Shown here in pieces: positions 18,409 to 63,483 of a DNA stretch of 64,000 nt; the stretch's first letter is position 1, and every line of letters begins with the position of its first letter. Position numbers and translations under genes: made by a program. The DNA is from Phyllobates terribilis (Eukaryota): the NCBI RefSeq assembly GCF_046119375.1, contig NW_027362769.1, forward strand, positions 101,804,001 to 101,868,000. The letters run 5' to 3'. The notes beneath the pieces are model-generated. The model was not told the DNA's origin. It did no database searches and was given only the letters and a program-made list of their open reading frames with translations.

Positions 18409-18633
18409 TATCAAGAAAATGCAAAGCAGTCATCAAAGCAAAAGGTGGCTACTTTGAAGAACCTAGAATATAAGACATATTTTCAGTTGTTTCACACTTT
18501 TTTGTTAAGTATATAATTCCACATGTGTTAATTCATAGTTTTGATGCCTTCAGTGAGAATGTACAATTTTCAAAGTCATGAAAATACAGAAAAATCTTTA
18601 AATGAGAAGATGTGTCCAAACTTTTGGTCTGTA
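18409..18633 (+). mobile_element. Orphan TIR end of the same Tc1 family, abutting the full element and forming a palindrome
   Basis: Nearly identical to 20055-20271 and to the reverse complement of 18648-18862. Confidence 0.9.
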
Positions 18634-18644
18634 ATATATATATA

Positions 18645-20274
18645 CAGTACAGACCAAAAGTTTGGACACATCTTCTCATTTAAAGATTTTTCTGTATTTT
18701 CATGACTATGAAAATTGTACATTCTCACTGAAGGCATCAAAACTATGAATTAACACATGTGGAATTATATACTTAACAAAAAAGTGTGAAATAACTGAAA
18801 ATATGTCTTATATTCTAGGTTCTTCAAAGTAGCCACCTTTTGCATTCATGACTGCTTTGCACACTCTTGGCATTCTCTTGATGAGCTTCAAGAGGTAGTC
18901 ACCGGAAATGGTTTTCACTTCACAGGTGTGCCCTGTCAGGTTTAATAAGTGGGATTTCTTGCCTTATAAATGGGGTTGGGACCATCAGTTGTGTTGTGCA
19001 GAAGTCAGGTGGATACACAGCTGATAGTCCTACTGAATAGACTGTTAGAATATGTATTATGGCAAGAAAAAAGCAGCTAAATAAAGAAAAATGAGTGGCC
19101 ATCATTATTTTAAGAAATGAAGGTCAGTCAGTCCGAAAAATTGGGAAAACTTTGAAAGTGTCCCCAAGTGCAGTTGCAAAAACCATCAAGCGCTACAAAG
19201 AAACTGGCTCACATGAGGACCGCCCCAGGAAAGGAAGACCAAGAGTCACCTCTGCTTCTGAGGATAAGTTTATCCGAGTCACCAGCCTCAGAAATCGCAG
19301 GTTAACAGCAGCTCAGATTAGAGACCAGGTCAATGCCACACAGAGTTCTAGCAGCAGACACATCTCTACAACAACTGCTAAGAGGAGACTTTGTGCAGCA
19401 GGCCTTCATGGTAAAATAGCTGCTAGGAAACCACTGCTAAGGACAGGCAACAAGCAGAAGAGACTTGTTTGGGCTAAAGAACACAAGGAATGGACATTAG
19501 ACCAGTGGAAATCTGTGCTTTGGTCTGATGAGTCCAAATTTGAGATCTTTAGTTCCAACCACCGTGTCTTTGTGCAACGCAGAAAAGATGAACGGATGGA
19601 CTCTACATGCCTGGTTCCCACTGTGAAGCATGGAGGAGGAGGTGTGATGGTGTGGGGGTGCTGTGCTGGTGACACTGTTGGGGATCTATTCAAAATTGAA
19701 GGCATACTGAACCAGCATGGCTACCACAGCATCTTGCAGCGGCATGCTATTCCATCCGGTTTGCGTTTAGTTGGACCATCATTTATTTTTCAACAGGACA
19801 ATGACCCCAAACACACCTCCAGGCTGTGTAAGGGCTATTTGACCTAGAAGGAGAGTGATGGGGTGCTACGCCAGATGACCTGGCCTCCACAGTCACCAGA
19901 CCTGAACCCAATCGAGATGGTTTGGGGTGAGCTGGACCGCAGAGTGAAGGCAAAAGGGCCAACAAGTGCTAAGCATCTCTGGGAACTCCTTCAAGATTGT
20001 TGGAAGACCATTTCCAGTGACTACCTCTTGAAGCTCATCAAGAGAATGCCAAGAGTGTGCAAAGCAGTCATCAAAGCAAAAGGTGGCTACTTTGAAGAAC
20101 CTAGAATATAAGACATATTTTCAGTTGTTTCACACTTTTTTGTTAAGTATATAATTCCACATGTGTTAATTCATAGTTTTGATGTCTTCAGTGTGAATGT
20201 ACAATTTTCATAGTCATGAAAATACAGAAAAATCTTTAAATGAGAAGGTGTGTCCAAACTTTTGGTCTGTACTG
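18645..20274 (+). mobile_element. Full-length Tc1 transposon with ~215-bp TIRs in PLEKHA3 intron 3; one in-frame TAG at 19845
   Basis: TIR CAGTACAGACCAAAAGTTTGGACAC, TA TSD; ORFs 19095..19847 and 19863..20111 in one frame with DD34E motifs. Confidence 0.96.
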
Positions 20275-21211: not shown

Positions 21212-21456
21212 ATTGCCTCTTCAGAGATGGAGAACTCTATAGCACCACCTATTGGAAGCAGCGATCCTACAAGTCACAATCGACCCTTGTGCCTTGTAAG
21301 ATCGCGGCTTCCAATAGGTGGCGCTATAGAGTTCTAGTCCTCTTCCTCTCTGAAGAGGCAATTTGCATATTAAATTTCCCAGAGGAGCATTGCACAGCGA
21401 ATAAGCCTCCTTACATTGGCATGCCAGAGCCGATATGTCACTCTCCTCAAGGAGAA
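21212..21456 (+). mobile_element. Fragments of the hammerhead-bearing 330-nt repeat: inverted piece 21212-21288 plus forward piece 21293-21456 with the promoter-like module
   Basis: Aligns by eye to 48437-48525 and overlaps 35823-35830 (CAAGGAGA). Confidence 0.8.
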
Positions 21457-28564: not shown

Positions 28565-30033
28565 CAGTGGGGGAAATCAGTTTTTGATCCCTTACTGTTT
28601 TTGGAAGTTTGCCCAATGACAAAGAGATGAACAATCTATAATTTTAAAGGTAGGTTAATTTTAACATTGAGAGATAGAATATCCAAAAAAAATCTGGAAA
28701 ATCACATTGTATAAATTAGCTGTCTTACATAGTCACCTGTATAAAAGACTACTGTCCACAGACCCTATTAATCAGTCAGACTACAACCTCTACAACATGG
28801 GCAAGACCAAATAGCTTTCTAAGGATGTCAGGGACAATATCATAGACCTGCACAAAGCTGGAATGGGCTACAAAATCATAAGTAAGACGCTGGGTGAGAA
28901 GGAGACAACTGTTGGTGCAATAGTAAGAAAATGGAAGAAATTCAAAATGACTGTCCATCGACATCGATCTGGGGCACCATGCAAAATCTCACCTCGTGGG
29001 GTATCCTTGATCATGAGGAAGGTGAGAGATCAGCCTAAAACTACACGGTGGGGACTTGTTAATGATCTCAAGGCAGCTGGGACCACAGTCACCAAGAAAA
29101 CCATTGGTAACACATTACACCTTAAAGGTTTAAAATCCTGCAGTGCCCGCAAGATACCCCTGCTCAAGAAGGCACATGTGCAGGCCCGTCTGAAGTTTGT
29201 CAATGAACACCTTGATGATTCTGTGAGTTATTGGGAGATGGTGTTGTGGTCAGATGAGACAAAAATTGAGCTCTCTGGCATTAACTCAACTCACTGTGTT
29301 TGGAGGAAGAAGAATGATGAGTACAACCCTAAGAACATCGTCCCAACCATGAAGCATGGTGGGGGGAAAATTATACTTTGGGGGTGATTTTCTGCAAAAG
29401 GGGACATGATGACTGCATCGTACTGAGGGAGGATGGATGGGGTCATGTATTGCGAGATTTTGGCCAACAACCTCCTTCCCTCAGTAAGAGCATTGAAGAT
29501 GGGTCGTGGCTGGGTCTTCCAGCAAGACAATGACCCAAAACATACAGCCAACGCAACAAAGGAGTGGCTCAAAAAGAAGCACAGTAAGGTCATGGAGTGG
29601 CCTAGCCAGTCTCCAGACCTTAACCCATAGAAAACTTATGGAGGGAGTTGAAGCTCCGAGTTGCCGAGCGACAGCCTCAAAATCTTAATAATTTAGAGAT
29701 GATCTGCAAAGAGGAGTGGACCAAAATTCCTCCTGACATGTGTGCAACCCTCATCATCAACTACAAAAATCGTCTGACTGCTGTGCTTGCCAACAAGGGT
29801 TGTGCCACCAAGTATTAAGTGTTGTTTGCCAAAGGGATAAAATACTTATTTCTCACTGCAAAATGCAAATAAATTTACCTAATTTATACAATGTGATTTT
29901 CTTGATTTTTTTGGGATATTCTATCTCTCAATGTTAAAATTAACCTACCCTTAAAATTATAGACTGTTCATGTCTTTGTCAGTGGGCAAAGATACAAAAA
30001 CAGCAAGGGATCAAATACTTATTTCCCCTACTG
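28565..30033 (+). mobile_element. Full-length decayed Tc1 transposon (~200-bp TIRs) between PLEKHA3 and FKBP7
   Basis: TIRs CAGTGGGGGAAATCAG.../...TTATTTCCCCTACTG, TA TSD; ORFs 28863..29387 and 29433..29630; several stops and frameshifts. Confidence 0.93.
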
Positions 30034-30518
30034 TATATATAGATACATATATGTGTGTATATATATGTACACATATACACTTGTATAAATATATACACAT
30101 GGTTCCTAGCGATGACATGCAGGGAGAGAACCTTAGTGTTGTACACGCCGGAGGTCACTGGAGCAGCTCCACACATCGGTCCGACACCCGGCACCCCCGC
30201 TGATCAGCTGTTATCAGTGTTAGCCATCACCGGTTGGAAGTACTCAGTGGCCGAGCTGCTCAGTCTACTTGTAGTGGCCGCAGAATACTACACATCCGCC
30301 TTCTATTCAAATCAGTAGGAGGCAGATGAGCAGTATCCTGTGGCCACTACAAGTAGACTGAGCAGCTCGGCAAGTGAGTACTTCAGGCCAGTGGTGGCCA
30401 ACACTGATGACAGCTGATCAGCGGGGGTGCCGGGTGTTGGACCACGACCGATCAGACATTGATGACCTATCGTGAGGATAGGCTGTCAGTGTAAAAGTAG
30501 TCAACAAACTCTGACTTA

Positions 30519-32644
30519 CAGTGAGTACGGAAAGTATTCAGACCCCTTTAAATTTTTCACTCTTTGTTTCATTGCTGCCATTTGGTAAATTCTAAAAAGT
30601 TCATTTTTTTTTCTCATTAAAGTACACTCTGCACCCCATCTTGACTGAAAAAAACAGAAATGTAGAAATTTTTGCTAATTTATTAAAAAAGAAAAACTGA
30701 AATATCACATAGTCATAAGTATTCAGACCCTTTGCTCAGACACTCATATTTAAGTCACAATATTGTCCTCCAATAACTACCATGCTGGATTTCTGCTTTT
30801 CACAGTCTTGTCTGCCCCTCACACAATCAGAATTTCTCCTTTCACCCCCAATATTTTACAACCTACTACCCCAGCAAATCAGGCTTTACACCTCCCTTGA
30901 AACCTACAAACTCAACGTAAAAACAATCTCTTCAGAAAGGCCTATAATAAAACCAATAACCCTGCAGCCGCCCTGCGCAGCTTCCACCCTCATCTACTGT
31001 CTCCTTCCCCTACACTTGTAGATTGTAAAACCCTCAAGCGCGGGGTCATCTTTCCCAGTGAGTCACTCAGTGTACCAGTTTGTCATTCTTTGTCATACTT
31101 ATTTTGGGACTTCTGCTATATACAGCACCTATGTATTAATATAATATGTAATCATGTACTGTAAACCTCGTTTGGACCTTTTTCACATGCACAACGCCCT
31201 GGAATTATAATGAGCTCACACATCATTTTTTAGGCTGTCTGAATTACTCACCCGAGTTTCCCTTTAATGTAGAGAAGTTTTACATAACTTGTCCATTTCC
31301 TTGTGATCCTCCTTGAGACAGTTCTACTCCTTCTTTGGAGTCCAGCTGTGTTTAATTAAACTGATAGGACTTGATTTGGAAAGGCACACACCTGTCTATA
31401 TAAGACCTCACAGCTCACAGTGCAGGTCAGACGAAATGAGCTCAAAGGAACTGCCCAAGGAGCTCAGAGAATTGTGGCAAGGCACAGATCTGGCCAAGGT
31501 TACAAAAACAAAAGAATTTCTGCATTACTCAAGGTTCCTAAGAGCACAGTGGCCTCCATAATCCTTAGATGGAAGAAGTTTGGGACCACCAGAAGTCTTC
31601 CTAGACCTGGCCGTCCAGCCAAACTGAGCGATCGTGGGAAAAGAGCCTTGGTGAGAGAGGTAAAGAAGAAACCAAAGATCACTGTGGCTGAGCTCCAGAG
31701 ATGCAGTGGGGAGATGGGAGATAGTTCCACAAAGTCAACTATCACTGCAGCCCTCCACCAGTCGTGCCTTTATCGCAGAGTGGCCTGTCGGAAGGCTCTC
31801 CTCAGTGCAAGACATATGAAAGCCCGCATAGAGTTTGCTCAAAAACACATGAAGGACTCCCAGACTATGAGAAATAAGATTCTCTGGTCTGATGAGACTA
31901 AGATAGAACTTTAAGGTGATAATTCTAAGCAGTATGTGGAGAAAACCAGGCACTGCTCATCACCTGCCCAATATAATCCTAACAGTGAAACATGGTGGTG
32001 GCAGCATCATGCTATGGGGGTGATTTTCAGCTGCAGGGACAGGACGACTTGTTGCAATTGAAGGAAACATGAATGCGGCCAAGTACAGAGATACCCTGGA
32101 TGAAAACCTCTTCCAGAGTGCTCTGGACCTCAGACTTGGCTGAAGGTTCACCTTTCAACAAGACACTGACCCTAAGCACACAGCTAAAATAACAAAGGAG
32201 TGGCTTCAGAACAACTCTGTGACCATTCTTGACTGGCCCAGCCAGAGCGCTGACCTAAACCCAATTGAGCATCTCTGGAGAGACCTGAAAATGGCTGTCC
32301 ACCAACGTTCACCATCCAACCTGACGGAACTGGAGAGGATCTGCCAGGAAGAATGTCAGAGGATCCCCAAATCCAGGTGTGAAAAACTTGTTGCGTCATT
32401 CCCAAGAAGACTCATGGCTGTACTAGCTCAAAAGGGTGCTTCTACTTAATACTGAGCAAAGGGTCTGAATACTTATGTGATATTTCAGTTTTTCTTTTTT
32501 AATAAATTTGCAATTTCAGTCAGGATGGGGTGCAGAGTGTACTTTAATGAGAAAAAAAAATGAACTTTTTAGAATTTACCAAATGGCTGCAATGAAACAA
32601 TGAGCGAAAAATTTAAAGGGTCTGAATACTTTCCATACCCACTG
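30519..32644 (+). mobile_element. Decayed IR/DR-type Tc1 transposon carrying a 527-bp internal insertion copied from its own flank
   Basis: TIRs CAGTGAGTACGGAAAGTATTCAGACCC / GGGTCTGAATACTTTCCATACCCACTG, TA TSD; ORFs 31420..31914 and 32219..32449. Confidence 0.93.
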
Positions 32645-35405: not shown

Positions 35406-35822
35406 GCACTAGTGAGTATGGGAACACACATTTCTGTCCTTTCTTTGAGGCCCCTGATTGTCCCTGCGGGTGGGTGTCCCTAGGTAGCACTGCTGTAAGA
35501 TTTTTCCGCAGCAATTCTTCCCCATGTGAACATACTGAACATAACACTAAGAAACTATCTAGCATATCTTAGGAGAGAAATCTGCTTCTTTATCCTCCTG
35601 GACTGATCTTTCACTCTCAATTTATGAATAAAATCTGTCAAATCTGTATTCAGTGAAGACAGAATTTCCCATTACTGAGATAGGAGATGACAGTTGGTTG
35701 CTGCAAGTTCTCCTGGAATGACAGTTACAGTTCTCCATAGAACTTTATGAGCACCAACTGTCATCTATCTCAGTAATGAGAAAGTCTGTATTCACTGAAG
35801 ACATATTTTACCCATACATCTA

Positions 35823-36008
35823 CAAGGAGAAACGTTACCGCTTAGACCCTAGACTTAAGCCGCTCACCTAGCCAAATCAGATCTCATACTTTGCACTGAT
35901 GAGGGGTAACACGCCCAAACACCATGTCTGCAAATTGAGATTTTGGCTTGGCTTTTATACTAAGTTATATGGCAAGGCGCTAGAGTTCTCTGAAGAAGCA
36001 ATTTGCAC
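35823..36008 (+). mobile_element. Internally deleted copy of the hammerhead-bearing repeat
   Basis: Shares the hammerhead, GGCTTTTAT..TAAGT.ATAT.GCAAGG and CTGAAGA.GCAATTTGCAC with 48342-48525. Confidence 0.8.
35890..35934 (+). ncRNA. Degenerate copy of the same hammerhead in FKBP7 intron 1 (G12 of GAAA lost)
   Basis: TTTGCA-CTGATGA-GGGGTAACACGCC-CAAAC-ACCAT-GTC-TGCAAA. Confidence 0.7.
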
Positions 36009-37875
36009 CCATACATTAAGAATTTTGAGAATGAAAGATCAGTTCAGGAGGAGAAAAGTGGATTTATCTCAGAACACATATTACGAAGTTTCTTATTTTC
36101 CTGTGTACTTTATTTATGGAAAAAAATACACAGATGATTAATCTTTAACAGTGTTTTTAAATTGAAAAATGCAGCTTTTATACAGTTTTTCTCAGCCAGA
36201 GCCACTGCTTTTGGGGCTATATAAGTGAATTGAGAGAGGCGTGCATCTCAATGAGGATAGGAGATAAATATTTGTAACAAGACAACCCCTTTAAGAACTC
36301 CATTAGAAGCTGTTGGCTGATATGTCCAAGGATGCAACGACTCACAAGTCTGATAAATGTCTGAACAGTTACTTATCTGTGTACAGGAGCTAAGCAAAAA
36401 ACTATGGAACAAGAGATCACATGGTTACATGATGTGACCGCAAGAATGATGACACGCCGGGAAAGAGACAGCTGGGTATTTCAGATACACAATTAAGGCA
36501 GAATTGACATGACATGTATATACTCGTACTATTAGGGTACACTCACACGAGCTGGAAAGATGGCGGTAAGTTAGAAAAACATGTGGTTTACAATGAATTA
36601 CCACCGGTAATTACCAATAGTTTTTGGTTTTCCCATTTGTCAATAACAATGTTCTTTTCTTGACTTTCTAAGTTGTGTAGACCTTATGTAGACGCTGCTG
36701 ACAGTTGTCTTTTCAGGTGACGTGACGTTCACTTGAATCAGTTGAATATGCAGTAGGCAGAATCTCACCGAGCTTCTTTTTCCCGTAATTGCTCACCTGG
36801 CTCCTTTGACAATTTACATGTAATCCTAATTGAGCACTTTGTCCTTTCTGAGAGATAATGCCTCCTACAAGATCGGCCCACTCATCCTCGCCGCTCTACT
36901 CATTTTGATGATCCAGATGGCTGCATTATTTTCAGTTCCAACCCACCTGAACTTAAGATACACGGGGATAAAGGAGCAGAATTATACCCCTGCAGTTCAC
37001 TGCTTACAAAGAAAGGAACAAGCAGGCTGCACACCTGCAAAGTAGCACATTGTATCAATGGCGGAAGAGGGCCCCAATCAAGAAATGTATCAGGAGCCCT
37101 TTACAGTCTCCTAGCTCATCTTAAAGCATCCTTTTATGTATCTCTGACCATAGCTGCTAGCTGCTTTCGAGGAAAAAATTGGTGTTGATGGTTGTCTCTT
37201 GTTTGTGTCTATGATGGTGGATTTTATCAAATGAAGGTTGCGTCCAGGTGGAAGTGTCCAGTCTGACCTCTTCCTTCATTCTGGGTGGGATCTGAATCTT
37301 CAGTTTTATCTAGGGCCTTAGTAGGACAAAATTACTTTAGTTACGAAATTTGATCTGCTCCATCGCATGCAGTATTGCAAAGGTATTCTACTCTTAAAGT
37401 TACTTCTCGCCTACACAGCACACTACAAACTATCATATGGTGGACACAAAGTCCCTATAGATCCATAGTACAGGCCAGCAGGTTCATGCAGGTGGGTTTT
37501 TTGCAAATGTAGGATATGCAACATAGGCATCGGAAATCTGAAGTTCTTTAATGTTTGATTTTTAGCATTGATCTAGTAGGTACCATAGTTAGTATGCCAT
37601 TAAATTAAGAAGCACCAGCGGTGTCTGGCTGCCACTCCCCTGGATGACCCATTTATGATAGAGGTGCATTTTGAGGATATACATTTATGGCATATACACC
37701 TGCCAGCCAAAACAACTGCTTTTATCTGTCATTTAATGTGTGTATCTTTACATCGGACACCGATGAGTTACCAAAATCTGCCAAAAGGTGGTTAGCTTTG
37801 TAGATTTTTGCAAACATTTGCCTGTAAAACCTGTCCTTTCCATAAAGTGATTGTTTTTTACCTGTTTGCACATAG

Positions 37876-45509: not shown

Positions 45510-45671
45510 ATAAGTCATTACCTAACAGAAGAGTTTAAAAAGGATGGAAAAAAGCGGGATCCTTCTGTGCATGGACGGATATTAACAGATATATTCCAGA
45601 AAAATGACCATGACAGCGATGGCCTCATATCAGCCCGCGAGTACAATGTCTATAAGCACGATGAGCTATAG
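45510..45671 (+). CDS. FKBP7: FKBP7 coding exon 4 (last; EF-hand 2, HDEL ER-retention signal)
   Basis: ISHYLTEEFKKDGKKRDPSVHGRILTDIFQKNDHDSDGLISAREYNVYKHDEL*; the four exons sum to 654 nt = 217 aa + stop. Confidence 0.97.
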   Translation: MSHYLTEEFKKDGKKRDPSVHGRILTDIFQKNDHDSDGLISAREYNVYKHDEL

Positions 45672-46206: not shown

Positions 46207-46700
46207 AGGGATTTCATGAGTTCCTGACAAATTTGAAATTGGATAAAATAAACTCAAACTGGCTGGTTAAAACCCTGATGTACCGGTACTTCCACTCTGA
46301 TCCTCCTCTCCGGTCACTATTTCCTTGGCTGCATCGATGATGTGCTGCCTACCACGCGTGACCGCTGAAATCCGCTGATGGATACCACTGTGATGTGAAC
46401 ATGTCTCTAGCGTTTGTTTTACAAAGAAACTATTATAATAAAACTAATTGTATGTAAATTTATTTGCCTTATTGTGACTGCATTAAGTTGTGAGGTTACA
46501 GACCTGCCAACATTTAATTTTCTACCATTTTTCTATTAAGAATTCCATTTTTTCTGTTTATAGTTTTATTCAATAAAAAATGATATTCTGCTTAAAAAAA
46601 ACCTCAATTTTCTCATAATACAAATTCAATACATTTTTTTAAGTTTCAAAGTCCAATTGACTTCATCAGGAGACCAAAAGTCTTGTGGTTGACTTGTGGT

Positions 46701-46743
46701 TCTCCTGATGAAGCAGTCAGCTAGGCTTCGAAACGCGTAGAGA
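46701..46743 (+). ncRNA. Minimal Penelope-type hammerhead ribozyme (palindromic stem III)
   Basis: TCTC-CTGATGA-A-GCAGTC(AGCTA)GGCTTC-GAAA-C(GC)G-TA-GAGA; ACGCGT palindrome; GUA triplet ending at 46739. Confidence 0.7.
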
Positions 46744-47715
46744 TTAAACCACGAAACGCGTAGAGATTAAACCACAATACTTATTCTAATTCCTTTTCTG
46801 GGCATTCCAATTCATTAAGACGCCAGTAACGCAGAATAACCTCCTGTTCACACCATTTGATTTCACACTTGTATTTCTGGTATTTTACACCTTCATATAT
46901 TTTTAGACGCAATCCTACCCCATTATGCCCTACATGCAATATTTGTAGAGCAACGAAAGTTAACTATAATAAAAGTTTATGTATGTGCACAGTGGTCCCC
47001 ATAGTAAAAGGCATGACTAGGATTATGTATCTAGCTCTGGATATAGAAAGTGCTGAGGTCACAACCAGCCCTTGGTGTATGAGGGACCAAAAGCCCCTGG
47101 GCCACAAAATAATAGTATAGAAATACTACAAATAGCACAGTGTACCTGAGTTCACTATTAAAGATTTTTTGCATTGGCCTCCTGAATCTTTAAAGGGTTT
47201 TATCAGGATTCATTTTTCATGTGCACTGGCTTGTACTCGTTCAAAATAATAAACTGAGAGGTAACACCACCTTCCACTGCTCCAGCACTACTACTCCGCC
47301 GCTGCTCCAGTGTTTGTAGGCTGCAGCGGTGAAGTCACGACCATAGGGCATGTGACTGCTTCAGCCAATCAATGGGCTTAGTGGTCCGCAAAGTCTACTG
47401 TGGCGTCACTGCTGAGTCCAGTAATTCGCTACAATATTCACGTGTGCTGTAGTCGTGATGTCACCCATGCAGCCTTTCAAAGACAGCAGTCTTTGAAGCA
47501 GTGACGGAAAAGTAGTACTGGAGCAGTGGAAGGTAATAAGAATTCTGCTGATAATTTGGGGATCCCCAACTATTATACACTGACTTGGATTCATTGTTCC
47601 TGATGACTCCTTTAGGATAATTGTCCAATTCAGATTGATCATACTTCAGCATGTTGTATGCCAAACTTTAAAGGGAGTAAGTTAAAGAGGACCTCTCACT
47701 GGAATTTTTGATTTA

Positions 47716-47917
47716 GGCCACGGCCCCACTATCAGTATTTGGTCAGTATTTTTTCTCAGGAGTGGGAGACAAAACCAGGAGTGGGTGATAAATGCAGAAT
47801 TGGTGACTTGTTTCTATTATACCTTTTCTCTGATTGTTCCTCATCTGGTTTTGGCTCCAACTCCTGAGAAAAAATACTGACCGAATACTGACCAAAACTG
47901 ATAGTGGGGCCATGGCC
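47716..47917. mobile_element. PIF/Harbinger-type MITE; related palindromic MITEs occur at about 6720-7490, 18220-18400, 42180-43220 and 61240-61660
   Basis: TIR GGCCACGGCCCCACTATCAG / CTGATAGTGGGGCCATGGCC; 3-bp TSD TTA. Confidence 0.75.
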
Positions 47918-47960
47918 TTAAGATGAGTATCTCCTCCAGTTGGTGCTTCTCCACCGATTT

Positions 47961-48525
47961 TGACTTAGGATAAAAGCCAAACCAGAATCTCAATTTGGGA
48001 TTTATTGCCCCTCCTCAGTGAAAATCGTTTTTGTTTTTGCAAACTGATTCTGGAAGAGTTTTCTCTTTTTCTTCTGTGCCCCTCTGTTCAAAAGTCATGT
48101 CCCCAAGTAGTCATGGCGAAAAATTTCCCTTCAACCAACTGGACGTATACAGCAGACCTTCTCTGTGGGTGTGTTGCTTCTTCTCTGACACTGCATAATC
48201 AAAACACCTGCCCACAGAGAAGAACTACGGTATACGCCAATTTGGTAGAATTTTTAAGAGCAGGGGGTATAACTTTGAAACAGAGGGGCACAGAAGAAAA
48301 TGAAAAACTTTTCCAGAATCAGTTTGCAAAACCAAAAATGATTTGCACTGAGGAGGGGCAACACCCTGAAACACCGTGTCTGCAAACTGAAATTCTGGTT
48401 TGGCTTTTATCCTAAGTCATATTGCAAGGCTCGTTAAAGGGTCAATATTGACTTGTAGGATTGTTGCTTTCAATAGGTGGCGCTAGAGTTCAAGTCCTCT
48501 TCCTCTCTGAAGAGGCAATTTGCAC
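47961..48525 (+). mobile_element. Hammerhead-bearing repeat copy (48341-48525) with a diverged inverted duplicate (47961-48112)
   Basis: Arms 47961-48112 and about 48261-48420 are reverse complements; the minus-strand copy lacks the GAAAC half of the ribozyme. Confidence 0.8.
48342..48386 (+). ncRNA. Type I hammerhead ribozyme with complete catalytic core
   Basis: TTTGCA-CTGAGGA-GGGG(CAACA)CCCT-GAAA-CA(CCG)TG-TC-TGCAAA: stem I 6 bp, stem II 4 bp (G.U closing), stem III 3 bp, GUC cleavage triplet ending at 48380. Confidence 0.85.
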
Positions 48526-49189
48526 AGGTACTTATAAACATGTCAACCATAAAGTCATTATTAAATCTATTTTAATGGGACATGGCTGATAAAGCACAGA
48601 CATACCACTTCAAAAGTACATCGATAACAGTAAAAAAGTAGAGTACAATGGAGTTCATGTGACATAGACACCAATGAGCAAAAAAAGTATTGCTAAAGAC
48701 TTAGTGGGGTTCACATAATTTGGAACATAACAGGGCTCATGTATCAACAGAAAAAAATGAAAAATAACTCAAATAAAACTGCACTGTGATTGTCCAAATT
48801 ATCTGATAAAGGAACACAAAAAGACAACTGGCTGCAGCTGGAGCCTCCCTGCTGTGCCCTGTCTGCAGAAGGACAAAAAGTGTCTAAGCCTCGCCCCCTT
48901 GACTTAAGGGTTGAGCTTCTTCAGGGCTCCAGCTGAAAATGGTACTGATTAGCATGAGAATAACTCATGTATTGTCTGCAGGATTTCTACAAGACTGTTT
49001 CAGGATTATACAGAGGACAACTATATTTTTTGTTAACATTAATTTCTAGGTTTATTGTTTAATCTTGATACATTATCCAAAATATATGAACCCCACTAAT
49101 CTAAGTCCTTAGACTCTATGTGTTTATTATGGTTTTGCACAATGACTGAAAGTCCCATACACTTTGGATTAAAGTCGTCCAAACCCACC

Positions 49190-49865
49190 AATTTTGGTCT
49201 GGACCGTTGACTATCTAACGTGTTCGGGCGGCCTCCGAAACCAACAATTTTGTTCTGACCGGTTGACTATCTAACATGTTCGGGTGGCCTCCGAAACCAA
49301 CGATTTTGTTCTGACCGGTTGACTATCTAACGTGTATGGGCGGCCTCCGAAACCAACGATTTTGTTCTGACCGGTTGACTATCTAACATGTTCGGGCGGC
49401 CTCCGAAACCAACGATTTTGTTCTGACCGGTTGACTATCTAACGTGTATGGGCGGCCTCCGAAATCAACGATTTTGTTCTGACCGGCTGACTATCTAACA
49501 TGTTCGGGCGGCCTCCGAAACCAACGATTTTGTTCTGACCGGTTGACTATCTAACATGTTCGCGCGGCCTCCGAAACCAACGATTTTGTTCTGACCGGTT
49601 GACTATCTAACGTGTATGGGCGGCCTCCGAAACCAACGATTTTGTTCTGACCGGTTGACTATCTAACATGTTCGGGCGGCCTCCGAAACCAACGATTTTG
49701 TTCTGACCGGTTGACTATCTAACATGTTCGCGCGGCCTCCGAAACCAACGATTTTGTTCTGACCGGTTGACTATCTAACGTGTATGGGCGGCCTCCGAAA
49801 CCAACGATTTTGTTCTGACCAGTTGACTATATAACGTGTATGGACGGCCTCCGAAACCGTCGATT
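49190..49865. repeat. 56-bp minisatellite, about 12 units, inside a MITE-like element (~49150-50050)
   Basis: CCGAAA recurs every 56 bp from 49235 to 49851; unit CTGACCGGTTGACTATCTAACATGTTCGGGCGGCCTCCGAAACCAACGATTTTGTT. Confidence 0.95.
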
Positions 49866-50539
49866 TTGGGTGGAATCACAGTGCCTGACACTCTTGCACC
49901 CCCAGAGGTGTCTGGCGATAGATTTCTTCCCCCTGTCCACCTTGTATACACATGCATGCTTGGCCGAGCTTGGCACACATGTGTATCAGGGAGTCGGTAG
50001 CTGTCGGCCAAACAAGTGCTCAGCCGACCCCTATCTAAGTTGTATGGGTGTAAGGTCACATTGACAAACTGGGAACACATTTGACACTGGAAAAATCAGG
50101 TATGTGGGTCAATCCGTACCCTATGCTTCATTCCTAATACATACACTGCAAGGTTTGTCTTCATCATCTAAGCTGAACTAAAAGCACCTGCACAAAAACA
50201 AGAGGAAATGTCCACATTCAAGAGGTTGTTAGGAGCATGTCTAGATCTCTTTTTATTATAAAGTAACATCTCAAAATGTGGTCCCTAAATGCTGTTATTA
50301 CAGACCGGGACTGAAGGAGTGGGGGTGGAATCATTTTCTTATAGTCGGGTGAACACCTACAATATGTCATGAATAGATGGACAAAATATAGGTGAAAAAA
50401 AAGTGCCCCCTACCCTAGAAATCTGTGCGTGATGTCCAAAACAAGACTATTTTAGAACATTAGATCTTGTCTAGTAATATTTTTTAGTGACTTATATATG
50501 TGGATGTATAGACTATATGGATAAAGGTATTAGGAGGAC

Positions 50540-51730: not shown

Positions 51731-53373
51731 CAGTTATATGAAAAAGTTTGGGCACCCCTATTAATCTTAAGCTTAATGTTTTATAAAAATTGGTGTTTTA
51801 GCAACAGCTATTTCAGTTTGATATATGTAATAACTGTTGGACACAGTAATGTTTCTGCCTTGAAATGAGGTTTATTGTACTAACAGAAAATGTGCAATCT
51901 GCATTCAAACAAAATTTGACAGGTGCATAAGTATGGGCACCCTTATCATTTTCTTGTTTTAAATACTCCTACCTACTTTTTACTGACTTACTTAAGCACT
52001 TTTTTTGGTTTTGTAACCTCATTGAGCTTTGAACTTCATAGCCAGGTGTATGCAATCATGAGAAAAGCTACTTAAAGTGGCCACTTGCAAGTTGTTCTCC
52101 TGTTTGAATCTTCTCTGAAGAGTGGCATCATGGGCTCCTCAAAACAACTGTCAAATGATCTGAAAACAAAGATTATTCAACATAGTTGTTCAGGGGAAGG
52201 ATACAAAAAGCTGTTTCAGAGATTTAACCTGTCAGTTTCCACTGTGAGGAACATAGTAAGGAAATGGAAGAACACAGGGACAGTTCTTGCTAAGGCCAAA
52301 AGTGGCAGGCCAAGAAAAACATCAGAAAGGCAGAGAAGAAGAATGGTGAGATCAGTCAAGGACAATCCTCAGACCACCTCCAGAGAGCTGCAGCATCAAC
52401 TTGCTGCAGATGGTGTCACTGTGCATCGGTCAACTATACAACGCACTTTGCACAAGGAGAAGCTGTATGGGAGAGTGATGCGAAAGAAGCCGTTTCTGCA
52501 AGCATGCCACAAACAGAGTCGGCTGAGGTATGCAAAAGCACATTTGGAGAAGCCAATTTCTTTTTGGAAGAAGGTCCTGTGGACTGATGAAACCTAGATT
52601 GAGTTGTTTGGTCATACAAAAAGGCGTTATGCATGGCGGCAAATAAACACAGCATTCCAAGAAAAACACTTGCTACCCACAGTAAAATTTGGTGGAGGTT
52701 CCATCATGCTTTGGGGCTGTGTGGCCAATGCCGGCAACGGGAATCTTGTTAAAGTTGAGGGACGCATGGATTCCACTCAGTATCAGCAGATTCTTGACAA
52801 TAATGTTCAAGAATTAGTGACATAGTTGAAGTTACGCAGGGGATGGATCTTTCAGCAAGACAATGATCCAAAACACCGCTGCAAATCTACTCAGGCATTC
52901 ATGCAGAGGAACAATTACAATGTTCTGGAAAGGCCATCCCAGTCCCCAGACCTGAATATCATTGAACATCTGTGGGATCATTTGAAGAGGGCTGTCCATG
53001 CTCGGCGACCATCAAACTTAACTGAATTGGAATTGTTTTGTAAAGAGGAATGGTCAAAAATACCTTCATCCAGGAAATCATTAAAAGCTACAGGAAGCGA
53101 CTAGAGGCTGTTATTTTTGCAAAAGGAGGATCTACTAAATATTAATGTCACTTTTCTGGTGAGGTGCCCATACTTATGCACCTGTCAAATTTTGTTTGAA
53201 TGCAGATTGCACATTTTCTGTTAGTACAATAAACCTCATTTCAAGGCAGAAACATTACTGTGTCCAACAGTTATTACATATATCAAACCGAAATAGCTGT
53301 TGCAAAAACACCAATTTTTATAAAACATTAAGCTTAAGATTAATAGGGGTGCCCAAACTTTTTCATATAACTG
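51731..53373 (+). mobile_element. Full-length Tc1 (copy G1), downstream of PJVK
   Basis: ~230-bp TIRs starting CAGTTATATGAAAAAGTTTGGGCACCCC, TA TSD; transposase with TAG at 52595 and 52823 plus a small deletion near the end. Confidence 0.96.
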
Positions 53374-55610: not shown

Positions 55611-57259
55611 CAGTTATATGAAAAAGTTTGGGCACCCCTATTAATCTTAAGCTTAATGTTTTATAACAATTGGTGTTTTTGCAACAGCTATTTCAGTTTG
55701 ATATATGTAATAACTGTTGGACACAGTAATGTTTCTGCCTTGAAATGAGGTTTATTGTACTAACAGAAAATGTGCAATCTGCATTCAAACAAAATTTGAC
55801 AGGTGCATAAGTATGGGCACCTCACCAGAAAAGTGACATTAATATTTAGTAGATCCTCCTTTTGCAAAAATAACAGCCTCTAGTCGCTTCCTGTAGCTTT
55901 TAATGAGTTCCTGGATCCTGGATGAAGGTATTTTTGACCATTCCTCTTTACAAAACAATTCCAGTCCAGTTAAGTTTGATGGTCGCCGAGCATGGACAGC
56001 CCTCTTCAAATGATCCCACAGATGTTCAATGATATTCAGGTCTGGGGACTGGAATGGCCTTTCCAGAACATTGTAATTGTTCCTCTTCATGAATGCCTGA
56101 GTAGATTTGGAGCGGTGTTTTGGATCATTGTCTTGCTGAAAGATCCATCCCCTGCGTAACTTCAACTTTGTCACTGATTCTTGAACATTATTGTCAAGAA
56201 TCTGCTGATACTGAGTGGAATCCATGCGTCCCTCAACTTTAACAAGATTCCCGTTGCCGGCATTGGCCACACAGCCCCAAAGCATGATGGAACCTCCACC
56301 AAATTTTACTGTGGGTAGCAAGTGTTTTTCTTGGAATGCTGTGTTTATTTGCCGCCATGCATAACGTCTTTTTGTATGACCAAACAACTCAATCTAGGTT
56401 TCATCAGTCCACAGGACCTTCTTCCAAAAAGAAATTGGCTTCTCCAAATGTGCTTTTGCATACCTCAGCCGACTCTGTTTGTGGCATGCTTGCAGAAACG
56501 GCTTCTTTCGCATCACTCTCCCATACAGCTTCTCCTTGTGCAAAATGCGTTGTATAGTTGACCGATGCACAGTGACACCATCTGCAGCAAGTTGATGCTG
56601 CAGCTCTCTGGAGGTGGTCTGAGGATTGTCCTTGACTGATCTCACCATTCTTCTTCTCTGCCTTTCTGATGTTTTTCTTGGCCTGCCACTTTTGGCCTTA
56701 GCAAGAACTGTCCCTGTGTTCTTCCATTTCCTTACTATGTTCCTCACAGTGGAAACTGACAGGTTAAATCTCTGAAACAGCTTTTTGTATCCTTCCCCTG
56801 AACAACTATGTTGAATAATCTTTGTTTTCAGATCATTTGACAGTTGTTTTGAGGAGCCCATGATGCCACTCTTCAGAGAAGATTCAAACAGGAGAACAAC
56901 TTGCAAGTGGCCACTTTAAGTAGCTTTTCTCATGATTGCATACACCTGGCTATGAAGTTCAAAGCTCAATGAGGTTAAAAAAACAAAAAAAGTGCTTAAG
57001 TAAGTCAGTAAAAAGTAGGTAGGAGTATTTAAAACAAGAAAATGATAAGGGTGCCCATACTTATGCACCTGTCAAATTTTGTTTGAATGCAGATTGCACA
57101 TTTTCTGTTAGTACAATAAACCTCATTTCAAGGCAGAAACATTACTGTGTCCAACAGTTATTACATATATCAAACTGAAATAGCTGTTGCTAAAACACCA
57201 ATTTTTATAAAACTTAAGCTTAAGATTAATAGGGGTGCCCAAACTTTTTCATATAACTG
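55611..57259 (-). mobile_element. Full-length Tc1 (copy G2) in a PJVK intron, near-identical to G1 and inverted relative to it
   Basis: Same TIRs, TA TSD; ORFs 56394..56906 and 55839..56387 in one frame separated by a single TAG. Confidence 0.96.
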
Positions 57260-57940
57260 TATGTACGATAAAAAAGCCAATATCCACAGAAACAGGCAAA
57301 AAAAACTTTTGGAAGATTGAATTCCAACCAGCCCATGCAGAAGACGAGTCAATCTGAAGCTATTAGTGAAGCAGATTTTCTCGTTATCAGTTTTCTCATG
57401 AAGCCGGTTGAATGGTTATTCACAAGATAGTCAATTATCTGCTATCCATAGGATATGGGATAACTTACTGATTGCTGGAGGTCAAATCAACAGGATCCCC
57501 AGTGATCCTGAGAATGGGGCTCAGGAATCGGGCTCTGCAGAGTCCTTTTTTAAATGAATCGGAGCTGCACTCGCTCGACCCTGGCTTCATTCATTGTCTA
57601 TGGGAGCGCAAGAGAAAGCACCGCACTTAGTTATTTCCAGCAGTCTCATAAACAAAGCATAGAGCCAGGGTCAAGCAACTACATCTTCGATCCATTCAGG
57701 ATGGGGCTCTGCAGATCCCAGCTCCCACCCAGATTCAAGAGGCCGATTCTAAGGATCATTGAGGGTCGTAGTGGTCAGAGCCTCAGCGATCAGTAAATTC
57801 TGTCCTGTCCATAGAATAAGACAATTTAAAGGGGATGTCTGCTTTCAGAAAACCATATTCTATAACAGGGATGTCAAACTCAGACACACAGAGGGCCAAA
57901 ATGAAAAACTTGGACAAAGTCGCAGTCCAACCAGTATACA

Positions 57941-58968
57941 GTATAATGGGCTCCACATAGTCCTCCATACAGAATAATGGGCCCCACATAGTCCTCCATA
58001 CAGAATAATGGGCCCCACATAGTCCTCCATATAGAATAATGGCCCCACATAGTCCTCCATATAGAATAATAGGCCCCACATAGTCCTCCATATAGAATGA
58101 TGGCCCCACATACTCCTCCATATAGAATAATAGGCCCCACATAGTCCTCCATATAGAATAATGGCCCTACATAGTCCTCCATACAGAATAATGGCTCCAC
58201 ATAGTCCTTCATACAGAATAATGGGCCCCACATAGTCCTCCATACAGAATAATGGGCCCCACATAGTCCTCCATACGGAATAATGGGTCCACATAGTCCT
58301 CAATACAGAATAATGGTCCCACATAGTCCTCCATACAGAATAATGGGCCCCACATAGTCCTCCACACAGTATAATGGGCCCACATAGTCCGCCATAGCTC
58401 CATACTGTACAATGGGCCCCACATAGTCCTCCATACAGAATAATGACCCCGCATAGTCCTCCATACAGTATAATGGGCCCCACATAGTCCTCCATACAGT
58501 ATAATGGCCCCACATAGTCCTCCATACAGTATAATGGCCCCACATAGTCCTCCATACAGTATAATGGCCCCACATAGTGCACGATACAGAATAATGGCCC
58601 CACATAGTCCTCCATACAGTATAATGGCCCCACATAGTCCTCCATACAGTATAATGGGCCCCACATAGTCCTCCATACAGTATAATGGCCCCACATAGTG
58701 CGCGATACAGAATAATGGCCCCACATAGTCCTCCATACAGTATAATGGCCCCACATAGTCCTCCATACAGAATAATGGGCCCCACATAGTCCTCCATACA
58801 GAATAATGGGCCCCACATAGTCTTCCATACAGTATAATGGCCCCACATAGTCCTCCATACAGAATAATGGGCCCCACATAGTCCACCATACAGAATAATG
58901 GCCTCACATAGTCCTCCATACAGAATAATGGCCCTACATAGTCCTCCATACCGTATAATGGTCCCTAC
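57941..58968. repeat. 30/31-bp minisatellite, about 33 units, in a PJVK intron
   Basis: Unit GCCCCACATAGTCCTCCATACAGAATAATG(G); explains the long repetitive ORFs here. Confidence 0.95.
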
Positions 58969-63179: not shown

Positions 63180-63482
63180 GTCCCTGCACAGTAATAGAGC
63201 CCACCCTCATGGCACCCTGCACAGTAATAGAGCCCACCCTCATGGCACCCTGCACAGTAATAGAGCCCACCCTCATGGCACCCTGCACAGTAATAGAGCC
63301 CACCCTCATGGCACCCTGTACAGTAATAGAGCCCACTGTCATGGCACCCTGCACAGTAATAGAGCCCACCGTCATGGCACCCTGCGCAGTAATAGAGCCC
63401 ACCCTCATGGTACCCTGCGCAGTAATAGAGCCCTCCCTCATGGCACCCTGCACAGTAATAGAGCCCACCATCATGGCACCCT
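63180..63482. repeat. 33-bp minisatellite, about 9 units
   Basis: Unit ATGGCACCCTGCACAGTAATAGAGCCCACCCTC. Confidence 0.95.
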
Positions 63483-63483
63483 G

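What the first reader, a model, noticed from the sequence alone, without database searches (positions are those of the whole stretch)
47961..48525. Complete-core hammerhead copy embedded in a ~460-bp inverted duplication
Seen: all invariant core nucleotides are present at 48342-48386. Stem III (ACA-CCG-TGT) could fold as a monomer or, being near-palindromic, as a dimer. The mirror arm (47961-48112) carries the antisense ribozyme with its GAAAC half deleted, plus duplicated non-retrozyme flank, so a long transcript could sequester the ribozyme in dsRNA. It is the best candidate here for an active ribozyme and lies between the convergent FKBP7 and PJVK 3' ends.
Basis: partly seen in the sequence, partly recalled or inferred. 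Interest (0 to 1): 0.75.

Follow-up and report, generated by a model that had tools for sequence, protein, structure and literature searches.

The report
Decayed hammerhead retroelement copy in palindrome
The hammerhead ribozyme motif and the 460-bp inverted duplication are both real, but they look like an ordinary decaying copy of the hammerhead-carrying short retroelements already known in non-mammalian vertebrates, and this copy is unlikely to cut itself efficiently where it sits.

Summary
At 48342-48386 (+) there is a type I hammerhead layout with every invariant core base. Helix I has 6 bp, helix II 4 bp and helix III 3 bp, and the cleavage site follows C48380. It is the only such match in the window, and none appeared in 400 shuffles at this stringency. 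It lies in the right arm of a 459-bp palindrome (47961-48419). The left arm lacks 14 nt that include GAAAC.

- **Repeat family:** a second copy at 35870-36008 has CUGAUGA but C in place of G12. A third locus at 21212-21367 is a head-to-head pair of the family's 3' part.
- **Known kind:** type I hammerheads in short retroelements linked to Penelope-like elements are known in thousands of copies. Head-to-head inverted copies are a published insertion signature of those elements.
- **Weak points:** G10.1 pairs with U, not C. Helix III is marginal and there is no tandem partner. An upstream decoy strand (48313-48328) and the left arm both out-compete helix I in folding. Rfam reports no hammerhead, even at E up to 10.

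Verdict: a new member of a known kind, probably a non-functional relic. Interest is low.

The parts
48342..48386 (+). Type I hammerhead motif. Helix I 48342-47/48381-86, CUGAGGA 48348-54, helix II 48355-58/48364-67 (G10.1-U11.1 wobble at its base), GAAA 48368-71, helix III 48371-73/48377-79, predicted cleavage after C48380.
   Evidence: It is unique in the window and 0 of 400 shuffles matched at this stringency. There is no Rfam hit.
48313..48328 (+). Upstream strand CCAGAATCAGTTTGCA. Its outer part (48313-48322) is the distal closing stem of helix I. Its UUUGCA (48323-48328) is a decoy that competes with 48342-48347 for the 3' strand of helix I.
   Evidence: In the fold of 48310-48402, the MFE pairs this strand with 48381-48398. 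The constrained ensemble gives P(hammerhead) of about 8e-11. One compensatory change against copy c2, G-C to A-U, falls in the distal stem.
48387..48398 (+). 3' strand of the distal part of helix I (CUGAAAUUCUGG).
48313..48527 (+). Copy c1 of the repeat family, about 215 nt and 43% G+C. The hammerhead is near its 5' end. The 3' end (...GAAGAGGCAATTTGCA) is shared with copies c2 and c3. The 5' boundary is uncertain.
   Evidence: blastn within the window, alignment A1, G+C.
47961..48053 (-). Inverted partial copy of the family unit, forming the outer part of the left arm. It keeps CUGAGGAGGGG in antisense. It lacks 14 nt including GAAAC, has TTTTCA instead of TTTGCA in helix I, and stops 106 nt short of the family's 3' end.
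48054..48312 (.). Inner part of the palindrome. The arms are 48054-48169 and 48211-48312 (80-84% complementary), around a 41-nt spacer at 48170-48210. No other copy occurs in the window. It may be flank or a longer part of the element; this is undecided.
   Evidence: There is no significant similarity to the sequence upstream of copy c2.
35870..36008 (+). Copy c2 of the family, 85% identical over 89 nt, with internal deletions in its 3' part. It has CUGAUGA and the same helices I to III, but C where G12 should be. The hammerhead sits at the tip of a long helix I: 6 bp, a small internal loop, then 7 bp and 6 bp.
   Evidence: z = -3.1; 0 of 200 shuffles fold as well.
21212..21367 (.). Locus c3. 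Two copies of the family's 3' part lie head to head (21212-21288 minus, 21290-21367 plus), 91-92% complementary with a 7-nt spacer. Both lack the hammerhead.

Best explanation
This is a solitary, decaying copy of a short hammerhead-carrying retroelement. [quoted passage not shown] It lies head to head with a second, more damaged copy.

Shown: the motif is real and belongs to a repeat family with at least three loci in this window. These loci share one 3' end. Two of the three loci are head-to-head inverted pairs.

Inferred (origin of the palindrome): it most likely arose at insertion. PLE-type enzymes cut and extend both DNA strands and often leave an inverted copy next to the direct one. Both arms then decayed neutrally. 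The left arm lost GAAAC and a helix I base. The right arm changed two bases just 3' of helix I, and probably changed C11.1 to U at the CpG that every hammerhead carries there.

Inferred (activity): the complete core on the right arm is a survivor of chance, not of selection. In this setting the ribozyme is expected to be weak or silent. Helix III is marginal and there is no tandem partner for the dimeric form. Helix II has a wobble at its base. Two competing duplexes, the decoy at 48313-48328 and the left arm, capture helix I and the 5' half of the core.

Confidence by part: about 0.85 that it is a relic of a hammerhead-carrying repeat family and not chance. About 0.45 that the palindrome arose at insertion, and about 0.35 that it arose by later DNA duplication. 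About 0.85 that it has no function in the host.
For: - Motif and statistics.
- Family: blastn within the window finds c2 (E = 3e-21) and c3. Alignment A1 shows one common 3' end and different 5' extents.
- c2 keeps the same three helices, with CUGAUGA, at the tip of a long helix I. One compensatory pair change between c1 and c2 lies in the distal helix I.
- Head-to-head pairs: c1 and c3. By direct reading, so does the separate minimal hammerhead at 46.6-46.8 kb.
- Literature: metazoan type I hammerheads have a 6-bp helix I, a 4-bp helix II and a weak palindromic helix III, and work as dimers. About 9,000 minimal motifs occur in Xenopus tropicalis (PMC4209133). Amphibian monomers cleave poorly, 6-22% in 1 h (PMC7229834). 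PLE insertions are 5'-truncated, often with an adjacent inverted copy, and carry hammerheads in the pseudo-LTRs near the 3' end (PMC8557442). A PLE protein cleaves and extends both strands (PMC11167929). Vertebrate non-LTR retrozymes occur as dispersed monomers, are enriched in intergenic DNA and are related to PLE pseudo-LTRs, and only 1 of 9 tested constructs cleaved (bioRxiv 10.64898/2026.07.22.740005).
- Folding.
- Neutral decay on both arms, with c2 as outgroup.
Against: - The left arm ends 106 nt short of the family's 3' end. That is more than the 30-40-bp 'tail' difference described for PLEs.
- The inner 120 nt of each arm (48191-48312 and its mirror) has no counterpart upstream of c2. 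It may therefore be duplicated flank, which would favour a later DNA-level duplication.
- No PLE reverse transcriptase or GIY-YIG ORF was seen among the long ORFs of the window; only Tc1/mariner was found.
- Only three family loci could be examined. No copies from elsewhere were obtained, so there is no consensus and almost no covariation.
- Nearest-neighbour folding ignores tertiary contacts and co-transcriptional kinetics, so some cleavage of a nascent transcript is not excluded.
- An axolotl hammerhead with a U-U mismatch at the base of helix II still cleaves 22% in 1 h, so the G-U wobble alone is not fatal.
Confidence: 0.5

Rival explanations
1. The element is the same relic, but the palindrome is secondary. 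A single unit of about 215 nt inserted first. Later a DNA-level inverted duplication, for example by replication template switching, copied about 120 nt of upstream flank plus the first 107 nt of the unit.
For: - c1 and c2 appear to begin at the same point, CCAGAATCAG and CCAAATCAG, 20-30 nt upstream of the core.
- They show no similarity further upstream.
- The outer end of the left arm (47961) falls at an arbitrary point inside the unit.
- Complementarity falls towards the centre, from 95% to 80%, and there is a 41-nt spacer, as expected of an ageing palindrome.
Against: - The same family forms another head-to-head pair at 21212-21367, with both outer ends at the family's 3' terminus.
- A different hammerhead element 1.6 kb away is also head to head.
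- This recurrence points to the insertion mechanism rather than to independent accidents.
- The shared 5' boundary rests on a 9-of-10 match only.
Confidence: 0.35
2. It is an active ribozyme with a role in the host. For example, it might cleave read-through transcripts between the convergent genes, with the left arm or the decoy strand acting as a structural switch.
For: - The core is complete, helix I has 6 bp and helix II has 4 bp, as in canonical metazoan type I hammerheads (PMC4209133).
- It lies on the same strand as the FKBP gene, 2.7 kb downstream of its stop.
- The double-hammerhead fold is possible.
Against: - There is no tandem partner.
- G10.1 pairs with U, helix III is marginal, and Rfam gives no hit.
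- Competing duplexes are favoured by about 8 and about 28 kcal/mol beyond the minimal context.
- At least ten poly(A) hexamers lie between the FKBP stop and the motif.
- Both arms carry derived changes, and the sister copy c2 has lost G12, as expected under neutral decay.
- Only 1 of 9 frog retrozyme constructs cleaved in vitro.
Confidence: 0.08
3. It is a miniature inverted-repeat or foldback DNA transposon that happens to carry a hammerhead-like string.
For: - The window is full of short hairpin elements, for example 47712-47921 and 35637-35811, and of Tc1/mariner copies.
- c3 alone looks like a 155-bp hairpin element.
Against: - The right end of the palindrome (48419) lies inside a unit that continues without a break to 48527, as c2 shows.
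- No target-site duplication flanks 47961 and 48419.
- c2 has the unit without a mirror copy of the hammerhead.
- The copies share a 3' end but not a 5' end, which fits a retroelement rather than a cut-and-paste element.
Confidence: 0.05
4. It is a chance match to the hammerhead consensus.
For: A vertebrate genome is tens of thousands of such windows, so a loose descriptor (0.0225 hits per window) gives hundreds of chance hits genome-wide. Rfam reports nothing.
Against: - 0 of 400 shuffles matched at the observed stringency.
- A paralogous copy 12 kb away has the same architecture with the canonical CUGAUGA box and the same helices.
- Helix sizes match the published metazoan type I layout (PMC4209133).
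Confidence: 0.02

Closest known systems
Canonical metazoan type I hammerheads of non-LTR retrozymes (newt and axolotl satellite 2, HHR_Amex1 and HHR_Amex2; PMC7229834)
   Same: - Type I topology, with a 6-bp helix I continued by an internal loop and a closing stem.
- A 4-bp helix II and a short, near-palindromic helix III that can form a double hammerhead.
- Low G+C (43%).
- A unit of roughly 180-215 nt, within the 150-450 bp range.
- Intergenic position.
   Different: - It is not in a tandem array: one unit with an inverted partial copy.
- It has G10.1-U11.1 in place of G-C.
- Loop 1 to loop 2 contacts could not be recognised.
- The circular fold of the unit is not unusually stable (z = -1.4).
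- Expression as circular RNA is unknown.
Penelope-like element insertions and their pseudo-LTR hammerheads (PMC4209133, PMC8557442, PMC11167929)
   Same: - The copies share a 3' end and differ in 5' extent.
- Head-to-head inverted partners occur at two of three loci.
- The hammerhead lies within a few hundred nt of the 3' end.
- A true PLE-style minimal hammerhead lies 1.6 kb away (46705-46739).
   Different: - The motif here has a helix III, no extra base between A9 and G10.1, and a 4-bp helix II. It is therefore of the canonical type, not the PLE minimal type.
- There is no reverse transcriptase or GIY-YIG ORF at the locus.
- The left arm stops 106 nt before the 3' end.
Rfam Hammerhead_1 (RF00163) and related hammerhead models
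   Same: The core boxes and the order of the helices are the same.
   Different: No match was reported at the gathering score or at E up to 10, even when only 131 nt were searched.

Membership tests
Hammerhead ribozyme, type I | Invariant core: C3 U4 G5 A6 N7 G8 A9, G12 A13 A14, the A15.1-U16.1 pair, and H17 (not G) | tested here: met
   48348-48354 is CUGAGGA, 48368-48370 is GAA, A48371 pairs with U48379, and C48380 is position 17.
Hammerhead ribozyme, type I | Three helices around the core, with helices II and III closed by loops and helix I open | tested here: met
   Helix I has 6 bp, helix II 4 bp and helix III 3 bp. None of 400 shuffles gives this. Helix III is marginal, with a 3-nt loop.
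Hammerhead ribozyme, type I | G10.1-C11.1 pair at the base of helix II (highly conserved; PMC4209133) | tested here: not met
   G48355 faces U48367, a wobble. Copy c2 has C at the matching position. This fits a C-to-T change at the C11.1-G12 CpG, which is an inference.
Hammerhead ribozyme, type I | Score at or above Rfam's gathering threshold for a hammerhead covariance model | tested here: not met
   No hammerhead family was listed at the gathering score, at E up to 10 in the whole window, or in 48300-48430 alone.
Hammerhead ribozyme, type I | Tertiary contacts between loop 1 and loop 2 | not testable with these tools
   Loop 2 is CAACA. Loop 1 would be the 19-nt asymmetric stretch 48323-48341. 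I had no reference consensus in hand to score them.
Hammerhead ribozyme, type I | Conservation and covariation of the helices across related copies | tested here: inconclusive
   Only two copies carry the motif. The helices are the same in both, with one compensatory change in the distal helix I. c2 has C at G12.
Hammerhead ribozyme, type I | Site-specific Mg2+-dependent self-cleavage | not testable with these tools
   This needs a bench experiment.
Metazoan non-LTR retrozyme | Tandem repeats (dimer or more) of a 150-450 bp unit, each with a type I hammerhead | tested here: not met
   There is no tandem array at 47900-48600. The locus has one unit and an inverted partial copy. It would count as a 'monomer' in the sense of bioRxiv 10.64898/2026.07.22.740005.
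Metazoan non-LTR retrozyme | Low G+C (below 50%) and no LTR, PBS or PPT | tested here: met
   G+C is 43-44%. No direct terminal repeats longer than the 7-nt TTTGCAC were seen.
Metazoan non-LTR retrozyme | Highly self-paired unit, expressed as circular RNA | tested here: inconclusive
   The circular fold of the 179-nt unit gives -44.1 kcal/mol, z = -1.4. Expression cannot be tested here.
Penelope-like element insertion | Common 3' end with variable 5' truncation | tested here: inconclusive
   c1, c2 and c3 end at the same ...GGCAATTTGCA, and c3 is clearly 5'-truncated. c1 and c2 may share a 5' boundary.
Penelope-like element insertion | [quoted passage not shown] | tested here: met
   This holds for c1 and c3. 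For c1 the junction includes about 200 nt of unassigned sequence.
Penelope-like element insertion | ORF with reverse transcriptase and GIY-YIG endonuclease | tested here: not met
   Pfam scans of the long ORFs of the window gave only Tc1/mariner domains. The ORF across the palindrome has no hit. At best this is a non-autonomous fragment.
Penelope-like element insertion | Minimal hammerhead: no helix III loop, an extra base after A9, a long helix II | tested here: not met
   The motif at 48342-48386 is of the canonical type. The minimal descriptor matches only 46705-46739.
MITE or foldback DNA transposon | Terminal inverted repeats at both ends of the element, flanked by a target-site duplication | tested here: not met
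   The palindrome's right end lies inside a continuous family unit. No duplication flanks 47961 and 48419.

The most novel reading that the evidence does not exclude
The palindrome might be a working module rather than debris. In one version, read-through transcription from the FKBP gene makes a 230-bp hairpin RNA. That RNA would feed small-RNA silencing of the hammerhead retroelement family. In another version, the decoy strand and the left arm gate a ribozyme that cuts nascent read-through RNA between the two convergent genes. Nothing here excludes either version, and nothing supports them beyond geometry.
Probability: 0.04. Interest if true: 0.65.

Novelty: new member of a known kind. Interest (0 to 1): 0.22.

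Why it matters
It matters little as a discovery. Type I hammerheads in short retroelements and in Penelope-like elements are documented in thousands to more than 100,000 copies per genome in amphibians, fishes and reptiles. Solitary copies in intergenic DNA are the common case.

The locus is useful as a worked example in two ways:
- A complete catalytic core does not make an active ribozyme. Here the copy with the intact core (c1) sits in a context that misfolds, while the copy with the good context (c2) has lost G12.
- Head-to-head pairs of hammerhead elements are better read as an insertion signature than as a purpose-built antisense partner.

Tried and rejected
- **Rfam:** scans at the gathering score, at E up to 10 on the whole window, and on 131 nt around the motif gave no hammerhead. 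The only hits were microRNA-like hairpins from palindromic repeats.
- **Copies from elsewhere:** a metagenome scan with an 18-nt anchor downstream of the motif returned more than 117 loci. All were short chance matches of at most 38 nt. L031, a contig from a human gut metagenome, was left out of the comparison because I could not tell whether it is human DNA. A viral-contig scan with the core-plus-helix II pattern found nothing. The bacterial genome collection was not scanned because it cannot hold this element.
- **Literature:** full-text searches for strings of the family found only unrelated primers. The supplement of the 2026 preprint holds no matching sequence. PMC2941103 is not held.
- **Upstream homology:** a local alignment of the sequence upstream of c1 against that upstream of c2 scored no better than shuffles.
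- **Circular fold of the unit:** it is not unusually stable.
- **ORF 48005-48415 across the palindrome:** no Pfam hit; it is an artefact of the repeat.
- **Penelope-like ORFs in the window:** none among the long ORFs.
- **Not used:** the large protein searches and structure prediction, because nothing here rests on a protein.
- **Not done:** the FKBP and PJVK exons were searched apart by reference and were not joined into a spliced model. The organism was not identified.

Full report
**What is there**

- Helix I: UUUGCA (48342-48347) pairs with UGCAAA (48381-48386).
- Core box: CUGAGGA is 48348-48354.
- Helix II: GGGG (48355-48358) pairs with CCCU (48364-48367) around the loop CAACA.
- Second core box: GAAA is 48368-48371.
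- Helix III: ACA (48371-48373) pairs with UGU (48377-48379) around the loop CCG.
- Cleavage site: C48380 is position 17.

All invariant core bases are present and the topology is type I. The one departure is at the base of helix II, where G10.1 faces U, not C.

A structural descriptor that I wrote finds this and nothing else on either strand of the window. In 400 dinucleotide-preserving shuffles, a looser descriptor hit 0.0225 times per window. One as strict as the observed motif hit never.

Against this, Rfam's covariance models report no hammerhead. This held at the gathering score, at E up to 10 over the window, and when only 131 nt around the motif were searched.

**The inverted duplication**

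The palindrome is real.
- The arms 47961-48190 and 48191-48419 mirror each other.
- Complementarity is 95% in the outer 37 nt, then 89%, 84% and 80% towards the centre.
- A 41-nt spacer lies at 48170-48210.
- Identity is about 77% over all aligned positions.
- As RNA the region folds into one hairpin of -250 kcal/mol, z = -24.

The left arm carries the antisense of CUGAGGAGGGG. It has a 14-nt gap opposite about 48364-48377, which removes GAAAC, and a G-to-T change in helix I.

**It belongs to a repeat family**

blastn of the region against the window finds two further loci.
- **Copy c2** (35890-35978, 85% identity, E = 3e-21) continues with deletions to 36008.
- **Locus c3** (21212-21367) carries the family's 3' part on both strands.

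Alignment A1 shows that c1, c2 and the plus copy of c3 all end at the same ...GAAGAGGCAATTTGCA, after which the flanks differ.

c2 has UUUGCA, the canonical CUGAUGA box, GGGG...CCC, then AAAC where GAAAC is expected, so C stands in place of G12. It then has ACA-CCA-UGU, C and UGCAAA. The architecture is therefore inherited, not accidental, but c2's core is broken.

With c2 as outgroup, the 14-nt loss and the helix I change are derived in the left arm. Two changes just 3' of helix I (48387 and 48391) are derived in the right arm. Both arms have decayed.

c2 also shows what the intact context looks like. The hammerhead sits at the tip of a long helix I: 6 bp, a small internal loop, then 7 bp and 6 bp (z = -3.1, 0 of 200 shuffles fold as well). 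This is the layout described for canonical metazoan type I hammerheads.

In the distal stem, c1 has a G-C pair where c2 has A-U. That is a single compensatory change.

**Why I doubt activity in place**

- **Weak helix III, no partner.** Helix III is 3 bp with a 3-nt loop. Amphibian-type hammerheads with weak helix III cleave poorly as single motifs (6% and 22% in one hour for two axolotl monomers) and need a tandem partner (PMC7229834; PMC4209133). Co-folding two copies of 48336-48392 does give the double hammerhead, with a 4+4 bp helix III around a C-C mismatch (-28.0 against 2 x -11.0 kcal/mol). Here, however, there is no tandem neighbour. The only neighbour is inverted and lacks GAAAC.
- **Decoy strand.** The right arm contains a second UUUGCA at 48323-48328, continuous with the distal stem (48313-48322). 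In the 93-nt context, the minimum-energy fold pairs 48313-48328 with 48381-48398 and leaves the ribozyme's own helix I strand out.
- **Modelled share of the hammerhead fold.**

| Context | Modelled share |
|---|---|
| Minimal context | about 6e-5 |
| With the decoy strand | about 8e-11 |
| With the left arm | about 9e-25 |

  These absolute values ignore tertiary contacts and folding during transcription, so only the relative drops are meaningful.
- **Wobble at the base of helix II.** The G10.1-U11.1 wobble replaces a pair that is highly conserved. An axolotl family with a U-U mismatch at the base of helix II still shows some activity, so this alone is not fatal.

**What the arrangement most resembles**

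Penelope-like elements carry hammerheads in their pseudo-LTRs near the 3' end. They insert with strong 5' truncation, often as partial tandems. [quoted passage not shown]

A purified Penelope-like protein cleaves and extends both DNA strands (PMC11167929).

A 2026 preprint finds the following (bioRxiv 10.64898/2026.07.22.740005).
- Vertebrate non-LTR retrozymes are absent from the birds and mammals sampled.
- They occur as dispersed monomers as well as arrays, and are enriched in intergenic DNA.
- They are related to Penelope pseudo-LTRs.
- Only one of nine frog constructs cleaved in vitro.

In this window, two of the three loci of the family are head-to-head pairs.

A separate element 1.6 kb upstream has a textbook Penelope-style minimal hammerhead. 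It has CUGAUGA, an extra A, a 6-position helix II with one mismatch and G10.1-C11.1, GAAA, a palindromic CGCG, then UA and helix I. It lies at 46705-46739, is unique in the window, and matched 0 of 200 shuffles. It is followed by a perfect 23-nt tandem duplication. By direct reading, it is preceded by a degenerate inverted copy at 46616-46680.

This recurrence is why I lean towards an origin at insertion.

**What does not fit, and the main rival**

- The left arm stops 106 nt before the family's 3' end.
- The inner 120 nt of each arm has no counterpart upstream of c2.
- c1 and c2 may start at the same point.

With three loci I cannot decide. I put about 0.45 on the insertion-time origin and 0.35 on the later duplication.

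No Penelope ORF is in the window. The long ORFs are Tc1/mariner.

**Context**

An ER-type FKBP gene on the + strand shows the end of the FKBP_C domain and EF-hands, and terminates in KHDEL. Its stop is at 45669-45671. This is consistent with FKBP7.

The exons were searched apart by reference.

The motif is intergenic and on the FKBP strand. At least ten poly(A) hexamers lie between the stop and the motif, so only read-through transcripts would contain it.

The window has no N. I do not take the window for human. It is dense in fairly intact Tc1/mariner ORFs and carries hammerhead retroelements of a kind reported absent from mammals. This is an inference; the species was not identified. One fetched contig from a human gut metagenome (L031) was left out of all comparisons.

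**Verdict**

This is a new member of a known kind: a relic copy of a hammerhead-carrying short retroelement in an inverted pair. Its catalytic core is complete, but its helix III, helix II base pair and context make efficient self-cleavage unlikely. There is no sign of selection or host function.

Noticed in passing
window 46705-46739 (+), with 46729-46774 and 46616-46680 (-): A Penelope-style minimal hammerhead. It has helix I UCUC/GAGA, CUGAUGA, an extra A, a helix II of 6 positions with one mismatch and G10.1-C11.1, GAAA, a palindromic CGCG with no loop, and UA at the cleavage site. It is unique in the window and matched 0 of 200 shuffles. A perfect 23-nt tandem duplication starts inside it. 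A degenerate inverted copy lies just upstream, head to head (read).
   Followed up: partly
window 21212-21367: A head-to-head pair of the 3' part of the same repeat family, 91-92% complementary with a 7-nt spacer and no hammerhead. Taken alone it would pass for a 155-bp hairpin element.
   Followed up: partly
window 35548-36095: Copy c2 lies inside a larger inverted repeat (35589-35620 against 36025-36056, 91%). That repeat also encloses another hairpin element, 35637-35811. These are nested insertions.
   Followed up: no
window 47712-47921: A 210-bp hairpin element lies immediately left of the palindrome, with arms 47712-47778 and 47845-47921 that are 89-94% complementary. It looks like a miniature inverted-repeat element unrelated to the hammerhead family.
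   Followed up: no
window 10889-11920 (-), 19095-19847 (+), 28863-29387 (+), 31420-31914 (+), 52085-52597 (+), 55842-56915 (-): At least six Tc1/mariner transposase remnants carry Sleeping Beauty-type HTH and DDE_3 domains. Several have ORFs of 150-250 aa.
   Followed up: partly
window 49191-49868, 57936-58965, 63182-63483: Three sizeable minisatellite arrays: a 56-nt unit x12, a 30-nt unit x34 and a 33-nt unit x9. The first lies 700 nt to the right of the palindrome. The long ORFs over the other two are repeat artefacts.
   Followed up: no
window 5145-5235, 18593-18688, 30031-30099: Perfect or near-perfect short hairpins give sub-threshold matches to unrelated microRNA families on both strands. 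This is the usual behaviour of palindromic repeats and simple sequence, not evidence of microRNA genes.
   Followed up: no
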